Assembly (NCBI RefSeq): GCF_000315625.1
Contig: NW_005434635.1
Location: forward strand, 62,001-126,000
DNA: 64,000 nt
DNA from: Guillardia theta CCMP2712
Lineage: Eukaryota; Protista; Cryptophyta
Reading direction: 5' to 3'
How positions within the stretch are numbered: position 1 is the first letter of the stretch; every line of letters starts with the position of its first letter. The notes beneath the pieces are model-generated. The model did no database searches, was not told the origin of the DNA, and worked only from the letters and a program-made list of their open reading frames with translations. A program made the position numbers and the translations under genes. Below, piece after piece: positions 6,378 through 41,000 of the stretch.

Positions 6378-8420
6378 ATGAGCAAGCTGTTGACGTACCT
6401 GCTGCTGATACACTTTCATCTCTCGTGCGGACTAGCACAAAGCGAGATCGTCGACGAGGTTCCTACCAGCGGATCTGTGAGACCGAACGAAACAATATGT
6501 TATGTGTTCGTCCTGGACGAAGCAAGGACCAGGGAGGTAGTGTTCTGGCAGGAACCGAAGCTTTACATCAGACTGGAACCGTGCCAGGGAGTTCCCCACA
6601 CGAGGGTTTCGGTGAGTGGATGTCCGAATCAAGGGTCTGCTGTCAACTGGGACTTCCAGAGCAGCCTGATGAGGAATGACTTGATGGTGCAAGGGTCTCC
6701 CGTCCCTCCTGCCTGGGAGTGGCCCGGGGATACGGAGGCTCTAGACATCGAGCTGTCATACCGTCGAGTCTTTGTGGAGATATCTCAATACTACAAACCC
6801 CTCAAGGTCGTTGCAGACTTGTTCGACTTGCAACAGGAGCTGCTTGCTAGAAATTTCACGGCGGATGCAGATGTTGTTGCGTCAATAGCCGAGGAGAAGA
6901 TTTCGTCACAAGGAGGGATGATGTTTCTGGACCCCAATTTGACAGAAATCCTGAAGAAGATCCAGGCAAAGCTCATGCCACCTGCAAACTACTTCCTTAC
7001 AGTCACTGTGCATGATGCTGCAAAGTTGACATCGCAAGATATTCATCCCATGTATAATTCCAAGAATTTCGACAAGAACATCACGTCCGATCTCTGGAAG
7101 ACTCCTCTTGTGCGTTTCACTGATGCCGTACAGGCAAGATTGTATTACATCGTGTTTTGGCCCCCGACTGGATCCACTGTAAAGAATCTCACATCCTCGA
7201 ATGTGACATCCAATATATCACAAGATCTCAGTAGTTTACGTAGAGACAACTCGCGGGTTGATGTTTCGAGCACTCCAAGTGTATCAAGTCATCAGGTGGA
7301 GGCAACAGATGCTGCTGTTACTGGCAGGCAAACATTGACGAGGGGAGCAGCGGTACATCCAGGCAGACTCGAAGAGGTCAGGAGTTTCAATGAGAAGATC
7401 ACGGAGAGATTGCGAGAGACTGACGAGCAAATCAGAAGACTTCGAAACAAGAACATCCCTGCTGTGAACAAGAAACTCGATGAAACCACAAGTCCTCAGG
7501 ATTCCATTCGATCGAGTCGACGTTCATTGAATATGACAGCGTTAGAGCGGGCAGCCATTCCCATCGTTCCAGAAGACATTGTTTACATGATCTTCTTCCT
7601 GGACATCACCACTGAATTCAAAGCAAGATGGGGCACAACGATGGATGCTGAGGGTCAAGTCAGGACTCGACTGATAGACAACCCTTGCGGTAGCTCTCAG
7701 AATGATTTTCAGAGGTCAGGAGAGCTGACATGTGGAGTGCTGCAGTGGATCACGAGGTTGGAATTTGACAAGCTTGACATCAATCGGAACGGATACCTCT
7801 CAAAGGACGAGTATGAGTTGCGCTACCCGAGCTATCTGCCACTCAAGGACAACGGGCTGAAGGGGGACTACACTTTCGAGAGTGCTGCAGAAAACTCGTC
7901 AGAGTGGGGGATATCTAAGGCAACCTGGGATGAACTTTACAGCGACGCCAACTCCGTAATGCTGGCCTCGATTAAAGATCCCCTCGTCCGCAATATGTGG
8001 ACAGTCTGCGGGGTGAGAAAGTTTGGGATCCCTTTGGACCCCTTGGGGATCGCAGTGGCAAACAATAGCGCAGGGACTTGGCTGAGTACTCGTGATCTTT
8101 CGCAGTTCGAAGATGGAAGGCTGAGATACCCTGTTGGAGGCCTCAACGACTCGGACAACAACGTGTACATCCTGAATGTCCTCGCAAGGAATCTCAAGAC
8201 GATGGAGGAGTTTGTTTACAACCCTCATGTGGTTCAGCGCAAAACTCCAGTCTACGTCGCTCCGCAGGTCAACGGGCCTCAAGTTGGGCTCATAGTAGGC
8301 GTTGCGCTGACGTCAGCCGCCATCGCGATCTTTGTCGTCGCAGCCATAGCAATGCAGACCAGTAAGAAAATGCGGCCGAGGCTTCGGATCAGGACAGAGA
8401 AAGCCGGCGCAAGGATCTGA
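6378..8420 (+). CDS. Type I membrane protein, 680 aa: signal peptide, luminal EF-hand, C-terminal TM helix and basic tail
   Basis: Single long ORF; N-terminal MSKLLTYLLLIHFHLSCGLA; EF-loop DINRNGYLSKDE; TM VGLIVGVALTSAAIAIFVVAAIAM followed by KKMRPRLR. Confidence 0.8.
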   Translation: MSKLLTYLLLIHFHLSCGLAQSEIVDEVPTSGSVRPNETICYVFVLDEARTREVVFWQEPKLYIRLEPCQGVPHTRVSVSGCPNQGSAVNWDFQSSLMRNDLMVQGSPVPPAWEWPGDTEALDIELSYRRVFVEISQYYKPLKVVADLFDLQQELLARNFTADADVVASIAEEKISSQGGMMFLDPNLTEILKKIQAKLMPPANYFLTVTVHDAAKLTSQDIHPMYNSKNFDKNITSDLWKTPLVRFTDAVQARLYYIVFWPPTGSTVKNLTSSNVTSNISQDLSSLRRDNSRVDVSSTPSVSSHQVEATDAAVTGRQTLTRGAAVHPGRLEEVRSFNEKITERLRETDEQIRRLRNKNIPAVNKKLDETTSPQDSIRSSRRSLNMTALERAAIPIVPEDIVYMIFFLDITTEFKARWGTTMDAEGQVRTRLIDNPCGSSQNDFQRSGELTCGVLQWITRLEFDKLDINRNGYLSKDEYELRYPSYLPLKDNGLKGDYTFESAAENSSEWGISKATWDELYSDANSVMLASIKDPLVRNMWTVCGVRKFGIPLDPLGIAVANNSAGTWLSTRDLSQFEDGRLRYPVGGLNDSDNNVYILNVLARNLKTMEEFVYNPHVVQRKTPVYVAPQVNGPQVGLIVGVALTSAAIAIFVVAAIAMQTSKKMRPRLRIRTEKAGARI

Positions 8421-8809
8421 AAGGAAGGATGAGGTGTCGAGTCAGAGCAGGCTGAGAGGGTGAAGAGCCAGGCGATGAAATGTGTCAGTGGGTATGACTC
8501 TCACTTTCAGAACCTGAATTTCTTATTCATTCTCCCCAATCCTGATTTGCGATAGAAGTGGAGGATGAAAAACGCAGGTCGCGCTGGGTTCATTTTGAAT
8601 CATCTGTCTTGTTTCGGTCCGACGGAATCTCGTCTTTCTCAGTCATGCAAATGAATTTTTGATTATGTTTTGATTTCATTCTTTAATGTCACACGTACAA
8701 ACAAAGTTTGCAGTAAAATATTTATGAGTCTCAAGTTGCTGAACTCATTTTGTAGTCTGTTACATCCAAGGCCACTGCCTGGCTCCTCCTGCCTGTCCTT
8801 TTATCTTCT

Positions 8810-9389
8810 CACCTCCCCTCGGTCCATTCTAGCACTCCCAAGTTCCTCCAGCGCAACCCTCTACGTCACATCTCCTCCCCACGCCCATCCTTCTCATCGC
8901 CTCCTATCTGCTCACGTGCATCATCGCCTCCTCCAGTAGCGATTCCGCGTCCAACCCCAACCGCCGTCCCAGCCACCCTGATCCCCTCGGCTCCTCTCCG
9001 ACGCTGTCCTCTAGCTCCGCTGGCGTCTCGTCGAGGCTGGAGCTCTCCGGCGAGGCAGCGCCACGACATCCCTCCTTGTCCGCCTGCTGGTCTCCAGGCT
9101 GCAGCCTCTTGTACGGCCACTTGCCTACGCGCAGCCTCTTGCACGCGTTCTTGAGCGCCGTCAGAGAGATGCCCTGCAAGACCGCGCCGCCATGGTCAGA
9201 GAGCGCTCGTGAGAGGGAGAGAGGAGGGCGAGGGCGGCTTACCAGGGCGCGAGCAGCGTCGGGCTGTCGGAGGTGAAAAAGCGCACGGAGGGAGTGGACG
9301 GTGAGGACGACCTTGGGCTTTCGGTGCTGGAGGTGTTGGGAGGGGGTCCTGCGGGGAGAGACGAAGTGAGGGACGATGTGCTCGTCCAT
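8810..9389. repeat. Left arm of ~580-bp inverted repeat (partner 11989-12570)
   Basis: Reverse complement matches 11989-12570 with about 11 substitutions and one 2-nt indel (counted by eye); homology starts exactly at the ATG and runs ~95 nt past the stop. Confidence 0.95.
8904..9389 (-). CDS. Small RWP-RK domain transcription factor, copy A (~138 aa, one 69-nt intron 9174-9242)
   Basis: After removing the GTAAGC...TTGCAG intron: LTVHSLRALFHLRQPDAARAL|GISLTALKNACKRLRVGKWPYKR, matching the RWP-RK consensus (F.LP..EAA..LGV..T.LK..CR..GI.RWP.RK). Confidence 0.9.
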   Translation of the reverse strand: MDEHIVPHFVSPRRTPSQHLQHRKPKVVLTVHSLRALFHLRQPDAARALVSRPRPPLSLSRALSDHGGAVLQGISLTALKNACKRLRVGKWPYKRLQPGDQQADKEGCRGAASPESSSLDETPAELEDSVGEEPRGSGWLGRRLGLDAESLLEEAMMHVSR

Positions 9390-9932
9390 ACTTGCGAACT
9401 GCATGATGTAGGCTAGTGTTGGGAGGTAGCAGGTAGAGTTAGGGAGCAAGGAACGCTGAAGGGGAGGGAGGTTTATTAGTAGGAACGGAACAGGCGCCCG
9501 ATTTTGGCTACAACATATTTTAAAAGTGGTCACGGAGCCAGCTCTGTGCCAGGCTAGCCTTGTAGGGTCGTTCATGCAAGGGAGAGGGTCACAGATTCTA
9601 TAAGTACCTCCTATAGGAATCATGACAAGGTTTATTTCAGGGCTCTCTGCCAACAATCAGTCACGTGGTTGACTGTTAGCATGTCATCGTTGATACGTGT
9701 AAGAATTTGCCTGTGTAACCAAGAGGTTTTTACTCCCACAGTCACGTCAGCAGTCACGTTTTCCTTTCCCAGATCCCTCGGGATTACCCGAACTTGAACA
9801 CAGTGACAGGCCCAAGTCCTCGTGTTACTGATTTTTAACTCAACTTTGAGTAAACGATCTACGGCCCGGTGTCGCTCACAGTCTTAACTGAATCCCGATC
9901 GAACGGCCGGCACTGAGAGTTTCCTTGTTCAG

Positions 9933-11649
9933 TCACTCCTGCAAGATCTGGACGGCAGGTCTCCATATCCTCACTCGCGCGTTGCTCATCCAGTTGTTGA
10001 TCTGCTTCAGCGAAACCCCCGTGAGTCGAACTAGATTCGCTTTCTCCGCTTCGCTGGGGTATGGGTTGTTGAAGTTGCGGACCTGCACGAGGCGGTCAGG
10101 TGAGAAGGAGAGGTATGCCAAGTGAAGACGCAGGAATGGCGGGTGGATAATGAAAAGAGGGGTTCAAGGGAGCTGGAGGTAGGAGTGGTAAAAGGTACCA
10201 GCCAGTCTTCGAGGATGCAAACAGCTTCTGGGTTGAGATGCCCTCTCTTGGTTGTCTTGGATGAATCTTCATTCCGTGAAAGCTTGACTTCTTGCTGCGC
10301 ACACCTACAGCGACACTGTGAAACACCAACAACCTGTTAACGCTTCTCCCTGACCTTCCTTGCTCATTCTCGCACGCTTTTCCTTTGCTTTCAATGGCCC
10401 TGAAGACCGTCGGGAGGTCAGAGTTGCCAGGACAGCCGAGGACAACGGGGTAGAGCAGGGGTTTGAACGCACTTGTCAATGGCGGCGGACAGAGCTTGTT
10501 TCGCCGGGTTGTAAGCAGCCATCGCCACGTTCGCTGCAGCCTTGAACTCTTCCTCGCACACAGGAGTGTCAGCAGACAGGGCTGATACCATCATCCTCAG
10601 TGTCTTCACTGATTGGTGCTCGAGCGCCCTCAGCTGCCGCAGCTCGACCTCTGCCTGCGCGCCACTGATGAGGAGGAGAGAAGAGAAGGAGATCAGAAAA
10701 GAGTCGAGAAGATGAGAGGAAAGGAGAGAAGTTGTATGCATTTCTACATCTTTGTTGAGATTTCTGGCTTTGCCAGAAAGATTCAGATTCTCTTTCTTGT
10801 CGTTGCCACACCTTACCAACAATTTACAATCGTGTGAGTCAAAATCACTGCAGACCTCTCATAAAGTAGGGACTGATTCTCCATCAACCATTGTCTATGA
10901 CGTTGCTTGATCTGCATGTGCTGGGGTTAGAGGGGAAACTGCGTTATCTTCATCGGTGTCATTACCTTTGCTTGAATGATCTTGAAATACGCATTGGACC
11001 TGTGTTTTGCTATCACCGAGCGAAAGATTGAAATGCTTGAAAGTTCTCACCTCAGCTTGTCTGACAGCAGATTGCTTGTCTGCGTTTGAATCCATGACTT
11101 CTCGGTCAACTTCTCCAAGACTTTCCAACGAAGGCGTCAGAGTGCTTCTTCAGCCGATCAAGTCTTACTCTCATTAAGACGATCAAGACGTCGGATCCTC
11201 GCCTCACATCGCTTCAAAGCACTCTGTTCGTCCGCACCAGTTTCTTCCTGTTTCGACGACTCGGAAGACAGGAGTACGCTTTGCGCTTGAACTTGAAGTG
11301 TCTTGAAATGATCGTCACTGGCTTCAGCTGTCTCTACATTGACGTCTTCCTGCTTCCTCTCCTGCTTCGAATTCTCGGAACACAATGTCTGACAATGGAC
11401 TGTCTTGATTGGAACAGACTTGCTCTTTGATAGGAAACTGAGCCTCCTCTCCTCGTCCGTAGTCGTGACTCGGTCGATCTTGCCCGCCACATCTTCGCTC
11501 TTCTCGACAACTTTCAGCATCTCTCGTTTGCCGTGCAGCTCCTGGTTCTTCTCTCTTCGTTCCATCACTCTCAGGCTCGTCCTCTTCTCCTGCTGCATCT
11601 CCCTCATCCCCGCCACTTCCACATCCATGCTCTCGCCAGCCTCAGCCAT
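9933..11649 (-). CDS. TALE-class homeobox transcription factor (non-KNOX, BELL/PBX-like) with upstream PBC-B-like helical domain; multi-exon
   Basis: Splicing intron 10083-10198 gives [17 protein letters not shown]|[42 protein letters not shown] (PYP loop, NARVRxWxP helix 3); PBC-like exon 10466-10654; ATG 11649 and internal exons approximate. Confidence 0.85.
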
Positions 11650-11728
11650 GCGGTGCAATCGGGTGGGCAGGAGGGACACGGTAACGGGTTACCGTATCGG
11701 TCCGTTTGACCACTCAGAGCTAATCGTA

Positions 11729-11875
11729 ATCCATGATGAGTAAAATCCATGATGAGTAAAATCCATGATGAGTAAAATCCATGATGAGTAAAATCCATGA
11801 TGAGTAAAATCCATGATGAGTAAAATCCATGATGAGTAAAATCCATGATGAGTAAAATCCATGATGAGTAAAATC
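11729..11875. repeat. Minisatellite, 9 perfect copies of ATCCATGATGAGTAAA (16 bp)
   Basis: Units start at 11729, 11745 ... 11857; lies in the ~340-bp region between the divergent TALE and RWP-RK copy B starts. Confidence 0.97.
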
Positions 11876-11988
11876 GTAGCCAGTGGATATGAATTGAGAC
11901 CTCATCAGTCATCAGCAACCCCTTCCTGCACCGACCGACGGGATTGTCTGCTAGCTGCTTCCAGATTCAGCCTTCTATCAGCATCTGC

Positions 11989-12474
11989 ATGGACGAGCAC
12001 ATCGTCCCTCACTTCGTCTCTCCCCGCAGGACCCCCTCCCAACACCTCCAGCACCGTAAGCCCAAGGTCGTCCTCACCGTCCACTCCCTCCGTGCCCTTT
12101 TCCACCTCCGACAGCCCGACGCTGCTCGCGCCCTGGTAAGCCGCCCTCGCCCTTCTCTCTCCCTCTCACGAGCGCTCTCTGACCATGGCGGCGCGGTCTT
12201 GCAGGGCATCTCTCTGACGGCGCTCAAGAACGCGTGCAAGAGGCTGCGCGTAGGCAAGTGGCCGTACAAGAGGCTGCAGCCTGGAGACCAGCAGGCAGAC
12301 AAGGAGGGATGTCGTGGCGCTGCCTCGCCGGAGAGCTCCAGCCTCGACGAGATGCCAGCGAAGCTAGAGGATAGCGTCGGAGAGGAGCCGAGGGGATCAG
12401 GGTGGCTGGGACGGCGGATGGGGTTGGACGCGGAATCGCTACTGGAGGAGGCGATGATGCACGTGAGCAGATAG
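11989..12474 (+). CDS. Small RWP-RK domain transcription factor, copy B (~138 aa, one 69-nt intron 12136-12204)
   Basis: Same RWP-RK domain sequence as copy A; differs at 3 residues, all C-terminal to the domain. Confidence 0.9.
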   Translation: MDEHIVPHFVSPRRTPSQHLQHRKPKVVLTVHSLRALFHLRQPDAARALVSRPRPSLSLSRALSDHGGAVLQGISLTALKNACKRLRVGKWPYKRLQPGDQQADKEGCRGAASPESSSLDEMPAKLEDSVGEEPRGSGWLGRRMGLDAESLLEEAMMHVSR

Positions 12475-12570
12475 GAGGCGATGAGAAGGATGGGCGTGGG
12501 GAGGAGATGTGACATAGAGATGGTTGCGCTGGAGGAACTTGGGAGTGCTAGAACGGACCGAGGGGAGGTG
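11989..12570. repeat. Right arm of ~580-bp inverted repeat (partner 8810-9389)
   Basis: Direct sequence comparison with the reverse complement of 8810-9389. Confidence 0.95.
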
Positions 12571-12879: not shown

Positions 12880-13875
12880 TTGACCTGCATCGTTTTCAGT
12901 CGAGAGCCTCCTGCCATTGAGGCAGCGTTGCCGCAAATCTTTGAGAGCCCTAGCCCTTCACTGTCCATGCTGAGGAGGAGGTCAGCTCAGGTCCTGCCTC
13001 CACGTCCTTGTACTTCTCTGTCGGGCAGTCTCCATCCCCGCACGCTGAAGACCTTGGAGGATATGGAGAACTGAGACATGCATGACATGGGCGGCTTGCT
13101 GCTGGACCCTCCCGATCGATGTGGAACGAGCTCTATCGAGACTGAGCTGGAGAGAGGGCTGAGAGAGGACAACAGCAACTCGAGTCTTTATACGATGCTG
13201 AAGGGAGACCCATCAAGATAAAGTCAATTGGCCAGGCGCGCAGCAACTTCGCATGTTTTTCAGACCAAAGCTGAAGTTTTGGAGGCTAAAGTCCGGCAAG
13301 TCATGAAGTCTGGTAGGATTGAGTTGCAGCTTTGATATGAGAGTGAATGGACGCATTTTTTTTGCAGCGTGAAACAAGAACAAGAAGAACAAACGAGCAA
13401 CAGACAAATAGAGCACAGATTGAATTCGTTGCAAAAGGAATCTTTCCGGACTAAAAAACGTTTCAACCAAGATATCTTGATAACCAAGAATGAATCTCGA
13501 AACACTCTTAGACAGAAGGTGGGATCATTGCTGGTGCATTTGCCTTCAGAGTGATGGTGGTCGTGACAGGTGAAGCAAGTGAAGCAAGCTCTCCAGGAGC
13601 CAAGGTTTGACAAAGGAAAGTGCGTCACCCAAATTACGTTGAACCCTAGCAGCGATCTCATTGCTCTGCCCACAGCATTCTCAGAAGCCGACGCGCAGTC
13701 TTGGCTACAACCTGTTCTCACCGCAAAGTCTTACCTTAGCATCATCAAGTTGCTCGGCTTCAAGCATCACATTGGTAAGGGCGCTGCACTGTTTGCCTTC
13801 ACCGTGGGGGCTCGGTCGAACGCTACGGAAGGAGGTCAAGTCAGAATCGCACCTGCCATTCCTGCAGTTTTGTGA
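12880..13875 (+). CDS. Hypothetical spliced protein with coiled-coil segment
   Basis: Exon-like ORFs 13369-13520 (KQEQEEQ...RQK) and 13570-13875 joined by a plausible GT...CAG intron; no domain recognised; start uncertain. Confidence 0.35.
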
Positions 13876-14042
13876 GGGATATCAGTTGCAGTTGAGCTCT
13901 GTGAGGGATATCAGTTGCAGTTGAGCTCTGTGAGGGATATCAGTTGCAGTTGAGCTCTGTGAGGGATATCAGTTGCAGTTGAGCTCTGTGAGGGATATCA
14001 GTTGCAGTTGAGCTCTGTGAGGTATATCAGTTGCAGATGAGC
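13871..14042. repeat. Minisatellite, ~6 copies of TGTGAGGGATATCAGTTGCAGTTGAGCTC (29 bp)
   Basis: Units at 13871, 13900, 13929, 13958, 13987 and a degenerate unit at 14016. Confidence 0.95.
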
Positions 14043-36600: not shown

Positions 36601-38034
36601 ATCAGGATCAGGATCATGATCATGATCATGATCATGATAAGGATCAGGAGATAAGGAGGGAGAGGGAGAGGGAAAAATGAAAGGGGAGAACGGGAGGACG
36701 GCGTAGTGGAAGGAGTAGGGGAAGGGGAGGAAGGAGGAGAGGCAGGAGGGACCTGGTCTTCTCTGACTCCGAAGCTGCCGTTCTGAAGGGTGACGTCATT
36801 GACTATGAGGATGAACTCCCTGCCCTTGGGACACTCGGGCGTCGTGACCGACACCCTCCAGACCACCATGGCGACGTCGTTGAGGCCGGGGGGGCGGATG
36901 ACCTGCGGAGATTATTAAGGAGGAGGAGGAAGAGGGTGAGGTGGAGGAGGAGGAGGAGGAGGAGGANNNNNNNNNNNNNNNNNNNNNNNNNNNNNNNNNN
37001 NNNNNNNNNNNNNNNNNNNNNNNNNNNNNNNNNNNNNNNNNNNNNNNNNNNNNNNNNNNNNNNNNNAGGAGGAGGAGGAGGAGGTTTATACAGGCACAAG
37101 TTGCTTGGCACTCGCGTCTAGCACGAGCTCGGTGACTTCGAACTTGTGGTCAGGAGTTGAACTCTTGCTGCCGCTCCAGACCTGCGCGGGCTCGTTAACT
37201 TGCTACCTCAACATCCATGACAGGCGCCGGTCAAGGGCAGAAGGACAATGAGAGGAAGGAGAAGACGGAGAAGAAGAGAGGAGGGAGGAGAAGAGAGGAG
37301 GGAGGAGAAGAGAGGAGGGAGGAGAAGAGAGGAGGGAGGAGAAGAGAGGAGGAGGAGTGAGTGAGTGAGTGAGTGAGTAAGTGAGTGAGTGAGAGAGGTC
37401 ACGGAGGAGAGGAGGCAAAAGGAAGCAGGAGGAAGAAGAGGTAGTGGTGGTGGTGCTGGTGGTGGTGGAGGACCAGGAGGAGGAGGAGGAGGAGGAGGTG
37501 GAGGAGGAGGAGAACGAGGGGCAGCAGATACAGATCTCTTTCTTTCCCTCCCTCACCTTCCTTGCGATCCATGACGATACTGCCTGCATCTTCTCATGGT
37601 GCGCCGCTCGCGCGTAGTCCTCCCACATGCTGGCAACGGCCTTCTCGAAGACGGTGATGAAGTCGTAGCAGTAGGTAGTCTCCTTCCCCTTCGCCATCAG
37701 CCGCCGAAGCTCGAGCTGCGGGAAGAAGGTGAGAGGAGGAGCAATCGAGGAGGAGAGGTGCACAGCCGATGCAGTGGAGGATAGGGGGAGGGATGGGACA
37801 AGAGGAGAGGAGAGGAAAAGAGAGGAGGGTAATTAGTGATCAAGATATAGAACCAGTGATTGTGATAGCGAGACGACGACGAGGAGGAGGATCAGGAGGA
37901 GGAGCAGGAGCAGGAGCAGGAAGAGGAGGAGGAGGAGGAGGAGCAGGAAGAGGAGGAGGAGGAGGAGGAGGAGGAGGAGGAGGAGGAGGAGGAGGAGGAG
38001 GAGGAGGAGGAGGAGGAGGAGGAGGAGGAGGAGG

Positions 38035-38088
<54 letters not shown>

Positions 38089-41000
38089 TCTCACCTGGTC
38101 TATAGGAGGGTAGGGAGTAGACAGCTGCTTTCCATCCAGAGGTCCCCCGGCCGGTCGCCCGTCCACCGGCACAGACTTGAAGATGTAGTTGCTGATCCCG
38201 ATCTCCTGGGAGGACGAGAACACTTCCAGGTACGCGTTCGTCTGCACCTTGTGCCCCGAGGGGTTCACAAGGACGACCCGCAGCCTCGTCGGTTGCATGC
38301 CCGGCCCCTCCTGCCCTCCTGCCCCTCCTCCTCCTGCCCCTCCTCCTCTCATGTGCCCCTGTGCGCTGTGCTCCTGTTCCATCAAGGTCAAGGTCACCTC
38401 AACCTCGATGACCCCAACTTGTCGCAGGCGGCGGAAGTGACGGTCGGCAACCTCCTGGAGGACCGCGATGGCCTCGTGGCGGGAGAGGAGGAGGTGAGGG
38501 AGGACGGCGAGGAACATGTGGTTGCACATTTGCAGCGTGCCGAAACGGTTGTACGCTACCTCCTTCCCTGTGCTCCTTTCGATGTAGCCCTTGGACAGCG
38601 CGAGGCTCTCGCAGCTCTCCTGGATCATCTGCTCCAGGTCGTGACGGAGGAACGCGATGCTGTCCTCCGCGTCCGCCATCACCCGGCCCAGCACCATGGA
38701 GCGGACGAAGAAGCGCTTCATGTCGGTCCTTGAGCTCTCCCCGTTCTTCTTCTGAGTGGCGATGTAGATCCGGATGTGCCGGTTCGAGACGGGCCCGTCA
38801 AGGACGTGGTCCACGTCATAGTTGACGCTCAGCCTGCCGATCTCGATGATGAAGGCCCGGGGGGGGTTCAGGTGCCGGTAGATCAGATCCTCCTGGTAGT
38901 CGAGCCGGTCCCTGAACGTGTGGAAGGCGGGGTACCCCCCGTCCGGCCGGAGGATGATAAGGGTGACGCGGGAGATCTTGAGGGAGAGGAGGAGGATCTT
39001 GTGGTTCTGGATAAGCAGGGCCACCCGCTCCTGGATCTGCTCATCCTTGCAGGACCTGGTGGACGTGCACAGGATCAGGTTGAGCACGTGGACGGGGTCG
39101 TTGAAGTCGATCCCGTTGTCGCTCTGCGTCGAGTCCGGCCCGTCGTCGGAGAGGAACGTCTTGGAGGGGGAGGGGGAGCAGCGCAGGGTGTCGAGACCCT
39201 CCTGGCTGCACTCCTCGGGCCTGAACTTGGCCTTGAGGACCTCGAAGAACCGGGCCTCGAGCTCAGTCAGGGAGTAGAAGATCGTGTAGAGGGTGTAGCG
39301 GCGGGGATAGTCGGGCTCCGGCAGGGCGTCCGCGTTCCCTCCCCGCTGCCACTTGTTCTTGAACTCTTGCATATCCATGATTGAGTCGCTGAAGCTTCCT
39401 CCTGCGAACTTCTGGTCGTGGCCATACTTGGCCCTCCTCCTCGAGCTCTGCGCGGGCTCCTGCGAGCTGGGGCTCTTCTCTCCCCTCCTCGACATGTCCT
39501 CGTCCGAGTGGCTGTTGGCCAGCACGCAGCGGTTGCTCGAGCTCGACAGCCATGACTGCCGTTGGAACCACATCTCAGCGCACATCACCTCCTTGCCCGC
39601 CGTCGCCGCCTCCTCGAAGATGCAGAGGGACGCGATGGTGTACTGCCTGTGGGAGCGGCGGATGAAGAGCTCCAGCGCCGCCATGCGGATCTCCCGCGGG
39701 TACTGAGTGCCAATGAAGGCCGACAGCTCCTCGAAGAGTGACGTCACCGACTCGACCATGGGGGAGAGGTAGTGCCCGAAGCTCTTGTAGCCCTTGACCA
39801 GGTCCGTGTCGTTGCTCTTGCCCCACTCCTGCACTATCTGCACCAGCTGCTGCTCCATCACCTCGTGCCTGATCTCGATCGAGGGCGTCACGATCTGCAC
39901 CAGCAGCTGCCGGGCCTCGAGCGCAACCTTTGAGTACGGCTGACCCCTCAGCTCCTCGAGGTCCCTCAGCACGCGCATGCACTGAGCGTTGGAGGTAGAG
40001 AAGCTCGTCCTCACCAGGCTCTCGTCCTTGCGCAGGCTCGACGGCTCTTCCACTCTACCCTCCAGGCTGCACGGGAACGTCGACAAGAAGCTGCGGTCCT
40101 CTTTGAGCCAGAACAGCAGCTCCGAGATGAAGGCGCTCTTTGCCTTCACCCCCTCGTTCGACAGGAGCGCCTCGTACACGCGCTCGCACGCAAGCTGCCG
40201 CTGCTGCCGGGCCTCGAGTCCCTGCTCCGACTTCGCCTCGATCGTCGCCGCCTTGAGCATCTTCATGATCACCTCCTCTCTTGCATCCAGCATCCCGCTG
40301 AAGTTCCCCTCCACCGCCAGGTACTTATGGAGAAAGGGGCTCAGCGTCTGCCACACAAAGAACCCGTGCCCCGAGGCATGGCTCTGGAGGACCTGGATCA
40401 GCATCTGGAGCCGCGTGTCGGACTCGTAGGGGGCAAGCTTGTCCAGCAGGAGCCGGGAGCAAGACGCCACGTCAGATTGCAGCGTCATGCTCCCCAGCTT
40501 CTGCTGCAGGCCTGCGTCTGCTGAGGAGGAGCCTGCTCCAAAGCCCGACAAGTCCTGTTCGCTGTTGTGGTAGAGGGGAGGAGCGGAGTGGTCGGAGGCG
40601 ACCGGAAGCATGTCGGGGGACTGGATCTTGGGGTTGACCTCGGAGCTGATGATGTCCTCCATCTCATCGATCACGTGCTTCGGCAGCGCTGCCTTGACCG
40701 TGTTGAACGCCTCCTGGATCTGATAGTAAGGGAGATTCGGGTCGTGGAGGGCGCTGGAGATCTGAGCCATGACAGCGGCATGAAGGTCACCCTCCTTCAT
40801 CGCAGGGTCAGTGTAGCCTGCCATGATCGCCTCTGCCCGCTGCAGCGCTTCCCGCAGCTTCTTGTGGCAGCGGCGCCCGGGAAGGTGAGGAGGGAGGAAG
40901 GGAGGGAACGAGCCCTTGAACAGCTCTGCTGTGGTGACCCCTTCCTTGTCGTCAAGGTCTAGCACGGCGATCACGTCTCCAGCCTTCACGTACGACTCTG

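What the first reader, a model, noticed from the sequence alone, without database searches (positions are those of the whole stretch)
8810..12570. RWP-RK / TALE-homeobox / RWP-RK cassette bounded by inverted repeats: candidate sex or life-cycle locus that could invert
Seen: a TALE homeobox gene (9933-11649) lies in a 2.6-kb spacer between two outward-facing, ~98% identical RWP-RK genes that themselves form ~580-bp inverted repeats. Known: small RWP-RK factors (Chlamydomonas/Volvox MID, plant RKD) set gamete identity, and TALE heterodimers (GSP1/GSM1, KNOX/BELL, brown algal ORO/SAM) trigger the haploid-to-diploid switch. IR-flanked invertible segments drive flip/flop mating-type switching in Ogataea and Komagataella. 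Inference: the two classic algal sexual-cycle regulator families are tightly linked in a structure able to invert by homologous recombination, in a lineage whose sexual cycle is poorly understood. Caveat: RWP-RK may be a much-expanded family in this genome, so the adjacency could be chance.
Basis: partly seen in the sequence, partly recalled or inferred. Interest (0 to 1): 0.9.

Follow-up and report, generated by a model that had tools for sequence, protein, structure and literature searches.

The report
Inverted RWP-RK gene pair around TALE gene
In the alga Guillardia theta, two near-identical small RWP-RK transcription-factor genes do sit as an inverted repeat around a TALE homeobox gene. 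The genome holds hundreds of RWP-RK genes that often form such inverted pairs, so this looks like an ordinary local duplication and not a sex-determining switch.

Summary
Arms 8810-9389 and 11989-12570 are 97.8% identical inverted repeats 2,599 bp apart. Each arm carries a 138-aa RWP-RK gene (GUITHDRAFT_152911 and 152912) facing outwards. A TALE homeobox gene on the minus strand (9933-11649) lies between them.

The sex-locus or switch reading is weak:
- Family size: the genome (Guillardia theta CCMP2712, 87 Mb) gives 571 first-look RWP-RK candidates. All 150 that were scored pass Pfam's cut-off, and about 20 loci hold opposite-strand neighbours.
- Other pairs: sampled pairs form inverted repeats of 160-1,250 bp at 91-100% identity, with 360-4,100-bp spacers.
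- Linkage: none of the six other TALE loci has an RWP-RK gene within 10 kb. A 9-kb contig carrying a TALE orthologue from a distant relative has none either.
- Anatomy: the arms run from the ATG to 95 nt past the stop, and both promoters lie in the spacer. Flipping would therefore only exchange near-identical coding sequences.
- Age: arm dS is 0.05, which argues against frequent recombination.

One open lead remains. Metagenome contig L042, from a close relative, joins the right copy's promoter side to the left outer flank. That is the junction an inverted spacer would give. It also fits a single-copy ancestor or an assembly chimera.

Earlier notes of this scan describe similar RWP-RK arrays elsewhere in this genome.

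The parts
8810..9389 (.). Left arm of the inverted repeat. It runs from the A of the RWP-RK start codon (9389) to about 95 nt past the stop codon.
   Evidence: 97.8% identical to the right arm over 582 columns
11989..12570 (.). Right arm of the inverted repeat, with the same extent relative to its gene.
8904..9404 (-). Left RWP-RK gene, GUITHDRAFT_152911. The NCBI model has 143 aa and starts at an ATG 5 codons upstream of the repeat. The 138-aa core is shared with the right copy. An in-frame 69-nt intron lies at 9174-9242.
   Evidence: Pfam RWP-RK 52.9 bits against a cut-off of 29.3; protein P0154; spliced translation matches
11989..12474 (+). Right RWP-RK gene, GUITHDRAFT_152912 (138 aa), with an intron at 12136-12204. 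It differs from the left copy at 3 residues.
   Evidence: Pfam RWP-RK 53.0 bits; P0002; spliced translation identical to P0002
9933..11649 (-). TALE homeobox gene. Firm parts are exon 1 (11169-11649, 160 codons), homeodomain helix-1 exon ending at donor 10199, and last exon 9936-10082 plus the stop at 9933-9935. The middle exons are tentative: about 11051-11120 and about 10470-10663.
   Evidence: Homeobox_KN E = 3.9e-16; frame and splice reading; orthologues P0012, P0066, P0097 and P0155 share the homeodomain and N-terminal motifs
11650..11988 (.). 339-bp divergent intergenic region between the TALE start and the right RWP-RK start. It contains a perfect 16-nt x 9.2 tandem array at 11728-11875.
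   Evidence: its right part (11847-11988) is conserved upstream of the RWP-RK gene on L042, where only two units of the 16-nt repeat align
9390..9932 (.). Unique spacer between the TALE stop and the left RWP-RK start. It must hold the left copy's promoter. It shows no similarity to the right copy's upstream region or to L042.
8426..8809 (.). Left outer flank. It is homologous (82%) to the DNA that follows the RWP-RK gene on contig L042.
   Evidence: score 522 against a shuffle maximum of 22

Best explanation
This is a lineage-specific inverted duplication of one small RWP-RK transcription-factor gene. The gene belongs to a family that has expanded to hundreds of copies in Guillardia theta and habitually forms local tandem and inverted pairs. 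Here the two copies lie on either side of a conserved cryptophyte TALE homeobox gene.

The duplicated unit runs from the start codon to about 95 nt past the stop codon. The right copy keeps what appears to be the ancestral upstream region, which it shares head-to-head with the TALE gene. The left copy keeps the ancestral downstream flank. This pattern is what a single inverted-duplication event gives: L|A|X|R becomes L|A|inv(AX)|R, where A is the gene and X is the promoter plus TALE segment. A duplication followed by one inversion would give the same result.

Both copies are intact and under purifying selection, so both probably encode working DNA-binding proteins. The adjacency to the TALE gene is most likely incidental. 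At most it reflects co-regulation through the shared 339-bp divergent promoter. The locus is not a programmed invertible switch.

Shown: the anatomy, the family size, the lack of linkage at other TALE loci, and the flank pattern of L042. Inferred: the duplication mechanism, the neutrality of any inversion, and the function of both copies.
For: - Family size and habit: 571 first-look candidates, and all 150 scored hits are over the Pfam cut-off. About 20 loci have opposite-strand neighbours within 5 kb, 15 of them divergent like this one.
- Other pairs: ten of twelve sampled loci form inverted repeats of 160-1,250 bp at 91-100% identity, with spacers of 360-4,100 bp. Two have spacers of 2.6 and 3.6 kb.
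- Closest paralogues: those on C27, C313 and C1 share the same intron position inside the domain, and the C27 pair is itself a divergent inverted pair.
- TALE loci: only 7 Homeobox_KN hits in the genome. The six others have no RWP-RK within 10 kb by a custom HMM.
- Relatives: TALE orthologue contig L054 (9.1 kb) has no RWP-RK.
- Divergence: between the arms dN is 0.0096, dS 0.051 and the ratio 0.19. dS to L042 is 0.072-0.073.
- L042 flanks: its upstream matches only the right copy's upstream, and its downstream matches only the left outer flank.
- Repeat limits: the arms end at the ATG, so both promoters are in the spacer.
Against: - A TALE gene sandwiched exactly between two RWP-RK copies is not expected often by chance. 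My rough estimate is about 5-25% for any of 7 TALE genes having an RWP-RK neighbour. This is inference from the counts and a recalled gene number of about 25,000.
- The right copy and the TALE gene share a short divergent promoter with a perfect 16-nt array, which could mean real co-regulation.
- L042 can also be read as the opposite orientation of the cassette.
- No reads were examined, so inversion within a culture is not excluded.
Confidence: 0.7

Rival explanations
1. The cassette is an inversion polymorphism. Homologous recombination between the 580-bp arms occasionally flips the TALE-containing spacer, so both orientations exist among Guillardia strains or populations, with no programmed function.
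For: L042 comes from a close relative (dS 0.07). It joins the right-copy upstream region to the left outer flank, which is exactly one of the two junctions of the flipped form. The arms keep perfectly identical stretches of up to 142 bp (site list), enough for recombination.
Against: There is one 1,154-bp MEGAHIT contig and no complementary junction. The same contig is explained by a single-copy ancestor or by a chimeric path through a collapsed repeat. Arm divergence of dS 0.05 shows little recent exchange between the arms. No other contig of that organism was found.
Confidence: 0.15
2. The cassette is a functional life-cycle module. The TALE gene and the RWP-RK copies are co-regulated, for example from the shared divergent promoter, and act together in gamete or zygote differentiation. 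Inversion might act as a switch, as in the flip/flop mating-type loci of methylotrophic yeasts.
For: Both families control sexual cycles in green algae and plants (established knowledge; Joo et al. 2018, PMC6219170, for TALE heterodimers). The RWP-RK protein is small and has no other domain, like MID/RKD-type factors. The divergent promoter is 339 bp long and carries a 16-nt x 9.2 array. Part of that promoter is conserved upstream of the RWP-RK gene in L042.
Against: The RWP-RK gene is one of at least 150 paralogues and has no detectable relatives outside cryptophytes. No other TALE locus is linked to RWP-RK, and L054 lacks the linkage. Inversion would only swap near-identical coding sequences between the same two promoters. 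The arms are not homogenised. The Hanusia phi TALE orthologue appears in an ordinary culture transcriptome (P0012 and P0156). No KNOX, POX or PBC partner domain was detected in the TALE gene.
Confidence: 0.1
3. The inverted repeat is an assembly artefact, either two alleles or a collapsed repeat placed wrongly in the reference.
For: The reference is an older draft assembly of 669 contigs. Orientation across a 580-bp repeat can be mis-set.
Against: The arms differ at 12 sites in a pattern of purifying selection. They have distinct unique flanks on all four sides. Both have gene models. The same kind of pair recurs at many loci. L042 independently confirms the promoter-gene junction and the gene-left-flank junction.
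Confidence: 0.05

Closest known systems
Local tandem and inverted arrays of the expanded RWP-RK family in Guillardia theta
   Same: Small RWP-RK genes in opposite-strand pairs with near-identical segments. The divergent orientation with a unique central spacer is the commonest form.
   Different: Here the whole coding sequence plus 3' UTR is repeated, not only the domain cassette. The spacer is long (2.6 kb) and contains an unrelated, conserved regulatory gene.
Flip/flop mating-type switching by inversion in Ogataea polymorpha and Komagataella phaffii
   Same: A chromosomal segment carrying transcription-factor genes is bounded by inverted repeats that can recombine.
   Different: By my recollection, in those yeasts the arms are identical and the outcome depends on which MAT locus lands next to a silencing centromere or telomere. 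Both orientations are found in cultures and switching is induced by starvation. Here the arms are the genes themselves and are 2.2% diverged. The promoters travel with the spacer, no silencing boundary is known, and no second orientation has been shown in one strain.
Chlamydomonas/Volvox MID (RWP-RK) and GSP1/GSM1 (TALE) sexual-cycle regulators
   Same: The same two DNA-binding domain families, and a small single-domain RWP-RK protein.
   Different: Orthology to MID cannot be shown, because only cryptophyte relatives were found. The TALE gene lacks detectable KNOX, PBC or POX domains. MID is single-copy and limited to one mating type, whereas this gene is one of hundreds.
Inverted duplication with inversion of the intervening segment (DUP-INV structural variants; the product of intramolecular replicative transposition)
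   Same: The layout L|A|inv(AX)|R. One copy keeps the old 3' flank and the other keeps the old 5' flank, as the comparison with L042 shows.
   Different: No transposon ends or transposase were found. The mechanism is inferred from one outgroup contig only.

Membership tests
RWP-RK transcription factors (Pfam PF02042) | RWP-RK domain above Pfam's gathering score | tested here: met
   P0002 scores 53.0 bits and P0154 52.9 bits against a cut-off of 29.3, covering profile positions 2-47 of 49. The core motif reads KWPYKR rather than RWPxRK.
RKD/MID-type (small, single-domain) RWP-RK proteins | Short protein with no PB1 or GAF domain | tested here: met
   138 aa, and no other Pfam family at E <= 1 apart from noise.
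RKD/MID-type (small, single-domain) RWP-RK proteins | Orthology to MID or RKD shown by phylogeny | not tested
   The word-based search found only G. theta, one metagenome relative and a 37%-identical Hanusia paralogue. No MID or RKD sequence was available by reference for a tree.
TALE-superclass homeobox (Pfam PF05920 Homeobox_KN) | TALE-type homeodomain above the gathering score | tested here: met
   59.1 bits against a cut-off of 24, E = 3.9e-16. Helix 1 lies on the preceding exon, which ends at donor 10199.
KNOX/MEIS, BELL or PBC classes of TALE proteins | Class-defining N-terminal domain (KNOX1/2, Meis_PKNOX_N, POX, PBC) | tested here: not met
   No such Pfam hit at E <= 10 in the exons of the G. 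theta gene or in the orthologous ORFs of L044 and L054. Six-frame genome searches for PBC and Meis_PKNOX_N found nothing at this locus. A conserved cryptophyte-specific N-terminal region does exist.
Invertible (flip/flop) genetic switch | Segment bounded by inverted repeats | tested here: met
Invertible (flip/flop) genetic switch | Both orientations present in one clonal population | not testable with these tools
No Logan contigs carry these proteins.
Invertible (flip/flop) genetic switch | Orientation changes which gene is joined to a promoter or silencer | tested here: not met
   The arms start at the ATG and contain the coding sequences, and both upstream regions lie in the spacer. Flipping therefore rebuilds the same promoter-RWP-RK pairs with proteins that differ at 3 of 138 residues. 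Position effects from outside the cassette were not examined.
Mating-type or sex locus | Allelic or presence/absence difference between mating types | not testable with these tools
   Only one strain's assembly is available, and no mating types are defined for G. theta.

The most novel reading that the evidence does not exclude
The L042 junction is real and the cassette exists in both orientations in natural Guillardia. This would be an inversion mediated by the inverted repeat around a conserved cryptophyte TALE gene that shares a divergent promoter with an RWP-RK gene. The three genes would then form a co-regulated gamete or zygote module in a lineage whose sexual cycle is unknown.
Probability: 0.1. 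Interest if true: 0.7.

Novelty: new member of a known kind. Interest (0 to 1): 0.3.

Why it matters
Cryptophyte sex is poorly understood, so a real physical link between a TALE gene and an RWP-RK gene would give a handle on it.

The evidence here says the link is most likely a by-product of a runaway gene family. That guards against over-reading such adjacencies in this genome.

Two things are still useful. First, the cassette TALE gene has clear orthologues in marine and freshwater cryptophyte data, with a conserved N-terminal region that no Pfam model describes. Second, comparison with one relative's contig gives a concrete, testable model of how these inverted RWP-RK pairs arise.

Tried and rejected
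- Exact-protein look-ups of both unspliced ORFs and both NCBI models found no Logan or ENA contigs.
- The Hanusia protein P0012 has no contig on record.
- A JGI metagenome scan with the RWP-RK protein found nothing. A scan with the TALE alignment gave one short, uninformative high-GC contig, L055.
- A homologue search with the left-flank 680-aa ORF returned only itself. The same search with TALE exon 1 returned only a 36%-identical Hanusia transcript.
- Paper searches for the gene identifiers and for PRJEB17505 found nothing.
- The bacterial-type promoter and terminator scan means nothing for a eukaryote.
- The spacers of two other long-spacer pairs (L020, L021) showed no clear gene.
- tblastx between L054 and the window found no synteny beyond the homeodomain.
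- The PBC-B-like label for 10466-10654 was not supported by Pfam.
Full report
**What is there**

The window is contig C39:62001-126000 of an 87.1-Mb, 669-contig assembly. Protein matches identify the organism as Guillardia theta CCMP2712.

The repeat finder and a self-blastn give inverted arms at 8810-9389 and 11989-12570. They align over 582 columns at 97.8% identity with one 2-nt indel, and lie 2,599 bp apart. The arm DNA occurs only at these two places in the genome. Elsewhere only the roughly 70-170-nt segment encoding the domain finds paralogues, at 66-91% identity.

Each arm carries a small RWP-RK gene, the left on the minus strand and the right on the plus strand, so they face outwards.
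- The mechanical ORFs hit only the second half of Pfam RWP-RK, because an in-frame 69-nt GT..AG intron splits the domain.
- Removing it gives 138-aa proteins identical to the NCBI models GUITHDRAFT_152912 (right) and 152911 (left, with 5 extra N-terminal residues).
- These score 53 bits against a cut-off of 29.3.

The homology starts at the A of the start codon and ends about 95 nt after the stop.

Between the arms lies a multi-exon TALE homeobox gene on the minus strand. Its last exon (9936-10082) matches Homeobox_KN at E = 3.9e-16. Helix 1 sits on the preceding exon, which ends at donor 10199. A 160-codon first exon opens at the ATG at 11649. The middle exons are tentative because I had no RNA evidence.

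The TALE start and the right RWP-RK start are 339 bp apart, head to head. A perfect 16-nt x 9.2 tandem array lies between them.

**Is the arrangement more than chance?**

A six-frame Pfam search gave 571 first-look RWP-RK candidates. Only 150 were scored, and all 150 pass the cut-off. The two genes studied here are not even among them, because their domain is split.

In that list I count about 20 loci with opposite-strand hits within 5 kb. Fifteen are divergent, like this pair.

I fetched twelve such loci. Ten form inverted repeats of 160-1,250 bp at 91-100% identity with spacers of 360-4,100 bp. Two have spacers of 2.6 and 3.6 kb.

The closest paralogues (on C27, C313 and C1) have the domain split at the same position. 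The C27 genes are themselves a divergent inverted pair at 98.7% identity.

By contrast, Homeobox_KN gives only 7 hits in the genome. I fetched 10 kb on each side of the six other TALE loci and scanned them with an HMM built from G. theta RWP-RK domains. None has an RWP-RK domain.

If RWP-RK genes make up roughly 0.6-2.3% of about 25,000 genes (a number I recall, not tested here), the chance that at least one of 7 TALE genes has such a neighbour is roughly 8-27%. The chance of sitting inside a pair is perhaps 5%. That is unusual but not compelling for a pattern noticed after the fact.

**Relatives**

An exhaustive HMMER search with the homeodomain exon found several orthologues.
- A Hanusia phi transcript: P0012, 96% identical, from EukProt.
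- Lake-metagenome contigs at 72-80% identity (L043-L053).
- A Tara Oceans contig of 9.1 kb (L054, protein P0155).

The upstream ORFs of L044 and L054 share short N-terminal motifs with the G. theta gene, so these are orthologues of the cassette's TALE gene.

L054 has no RWP-RK domain in the 5.7 kb upstream or 2.9 kb downstream of the homeodomain gene. The short lake contigs show none either, but they cover only about 0.45-0.65 kb of flank.

No KNOX, POX, PBC or MEIS domain is detectable in any of these proteins, so the TALE class is unassigned. Joo et al. 2018 (PMC6219170) mention a G. theta TALE (ID 137502) with a PBC-B domain. I could not link that ID to this gene.

**The one unexpected result**

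The RWP-RK search returned P0001, 91% identical over the unspliced 161-aa reading. It lies on a 1,154-bp ENA metagenome contig, L042 (ERZ930064/ERR2281809).
- Its 160 nt upstream of the ATG are homologous only to the right copy's upstream region, 11847-11988. The local alignment score is 109 against a shuffle maximum of 23.
- Its 437 nt beyond the repeat's outer end are homologous only to the left outer flank, 8426-8809. The score is 522 against a shuffle maximum of 22.

So L042 joins two unique sequences that lie on opposite sides of the cassette in the reference. Three readings fit.
1. **Single-copy ancestor.** The relative has L|A|X|R, and G. theta arose from it by one inverted-duplication event, L|A|inv(AX)|R. 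This predicts exactly the observed pattern, in which the left copy keeps the old 3' flank and the right copy keeps the old 5' flank.
2. **Flipped cassette.** The relative carries the cassette in the opposite orientation.
3. **Assembly chimera.** MEGAHIT took a chimeric path through a collapsed repeat.

At the 12 sites where the arms differ, L042 agrees with the left arm at 6, the right arm at 4 and neither at 2. This shows independent changes in both arms and no phasing signal.

dS between the arms is 0.051 and dS to L042 is 0.072-0.073. The duplication, or the last homogenisation, is therefore not much younger than the split from that relative.

No further contig of that organism could be found.

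**Why a switch is unlikely**

- The arms are the coding sequences and both upstream regions lie inside the spacer. An inversion therefore puts each promoter back in front of an RWP-RK coding sequence that differs at only 3 of 138 residues, while the TALE gene keeps its own flanks. Nothing is turned on or off unless an unknown position effect acts from outside.
- The arms have accumulated 5 synonymous and 3 non-synonymous differences (dN/dS 0.19). Systems that flip often keep their arms identical through gene conversion.
- The purifying pattern does suggest that both copies are functional genes.

**Verdict**

The best explanation (about 0.7) is an ordinary inverted duplicate of a member of a hugely expanded family that happens to enclose a conserved TALE gene. 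Co-regulation through the divergent promoter is a possible but untested extra. An inversion polymorphism (about 0.15) and a functional life-cycle module (about 0.1) remain open.

The decisive experiments are long-read or PCR orientation tests and expression data.

Earlier notes of this scan on other pieces of this genome describe the same family behaviour: arrays, gene conversion and no evidence of flipping. My own counts agree with them.

Noticed in passing
window 11728-11875: A perfect 16-nt x 9.2 tandem array lies in the divergent TALE/RWP-RK intergenic region. On the relative's contig L042 only two units of the repeat align at the same place, so the array length evolves fast.
   Followed up: partly
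L044:447-1271, L054:4461-5639, window 10421-10696 and 11170-11230 (minus strand): The cassette's TALE gene has orthologues in marine and freshwater cryptophyte data. They share conserved N-terminal motifs (an 'ALK-CEA-I-RL-RL' helix and a 'PVC-EE' segment) that match no Pfam family. This may be a cryptophyte-specific dimerisation region.
   Followed up: partly
window 6378-8420 (+): An intron-less 680-aa ORF with a hydrophobic N-terminus and a C-terminal membrane anchor. It gave no significant Pfam family (weak EF-hand hits only) and no homologue other than itself in the 5.8-billion-protein search.
   Followed up: partly
P0012 (Hanusia phi transcript, EukProt EP00960): The Hanusia TALE orthologue is recorded as a 129-aa product that appears to read through the homeodomain intron (the sequence before the last exon looks like translated intron). 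This suggests an intron-retaining or mis-translated transcript. The homeodomain exon is 96% identical to G. theta, while exon 1 is only 36% identical (P0156).
   Followed up: no
window 13871-14042: A 29-nt x 5.9 tandem repeat (98% matches) about 1.3 kb to the right of the cassette.
   Followed up: no
window 37000-38100: Strong purine strand bias (GC skew 0.46, AT skew 0.36), with a 17-nt repeat at 37259-37357 and a (GAG)x53 run at 37881-38039.
   Followed up: no
L021 (G000:C1:564500-570500) and the window genes: Small RWP-RK paralogues share a short conserved C-terminal motif (acidic residues followed by '..HV..' at the very end). This hints at a second functional element besides the DNA-binding domain in this subfamily.
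   Followed up: no
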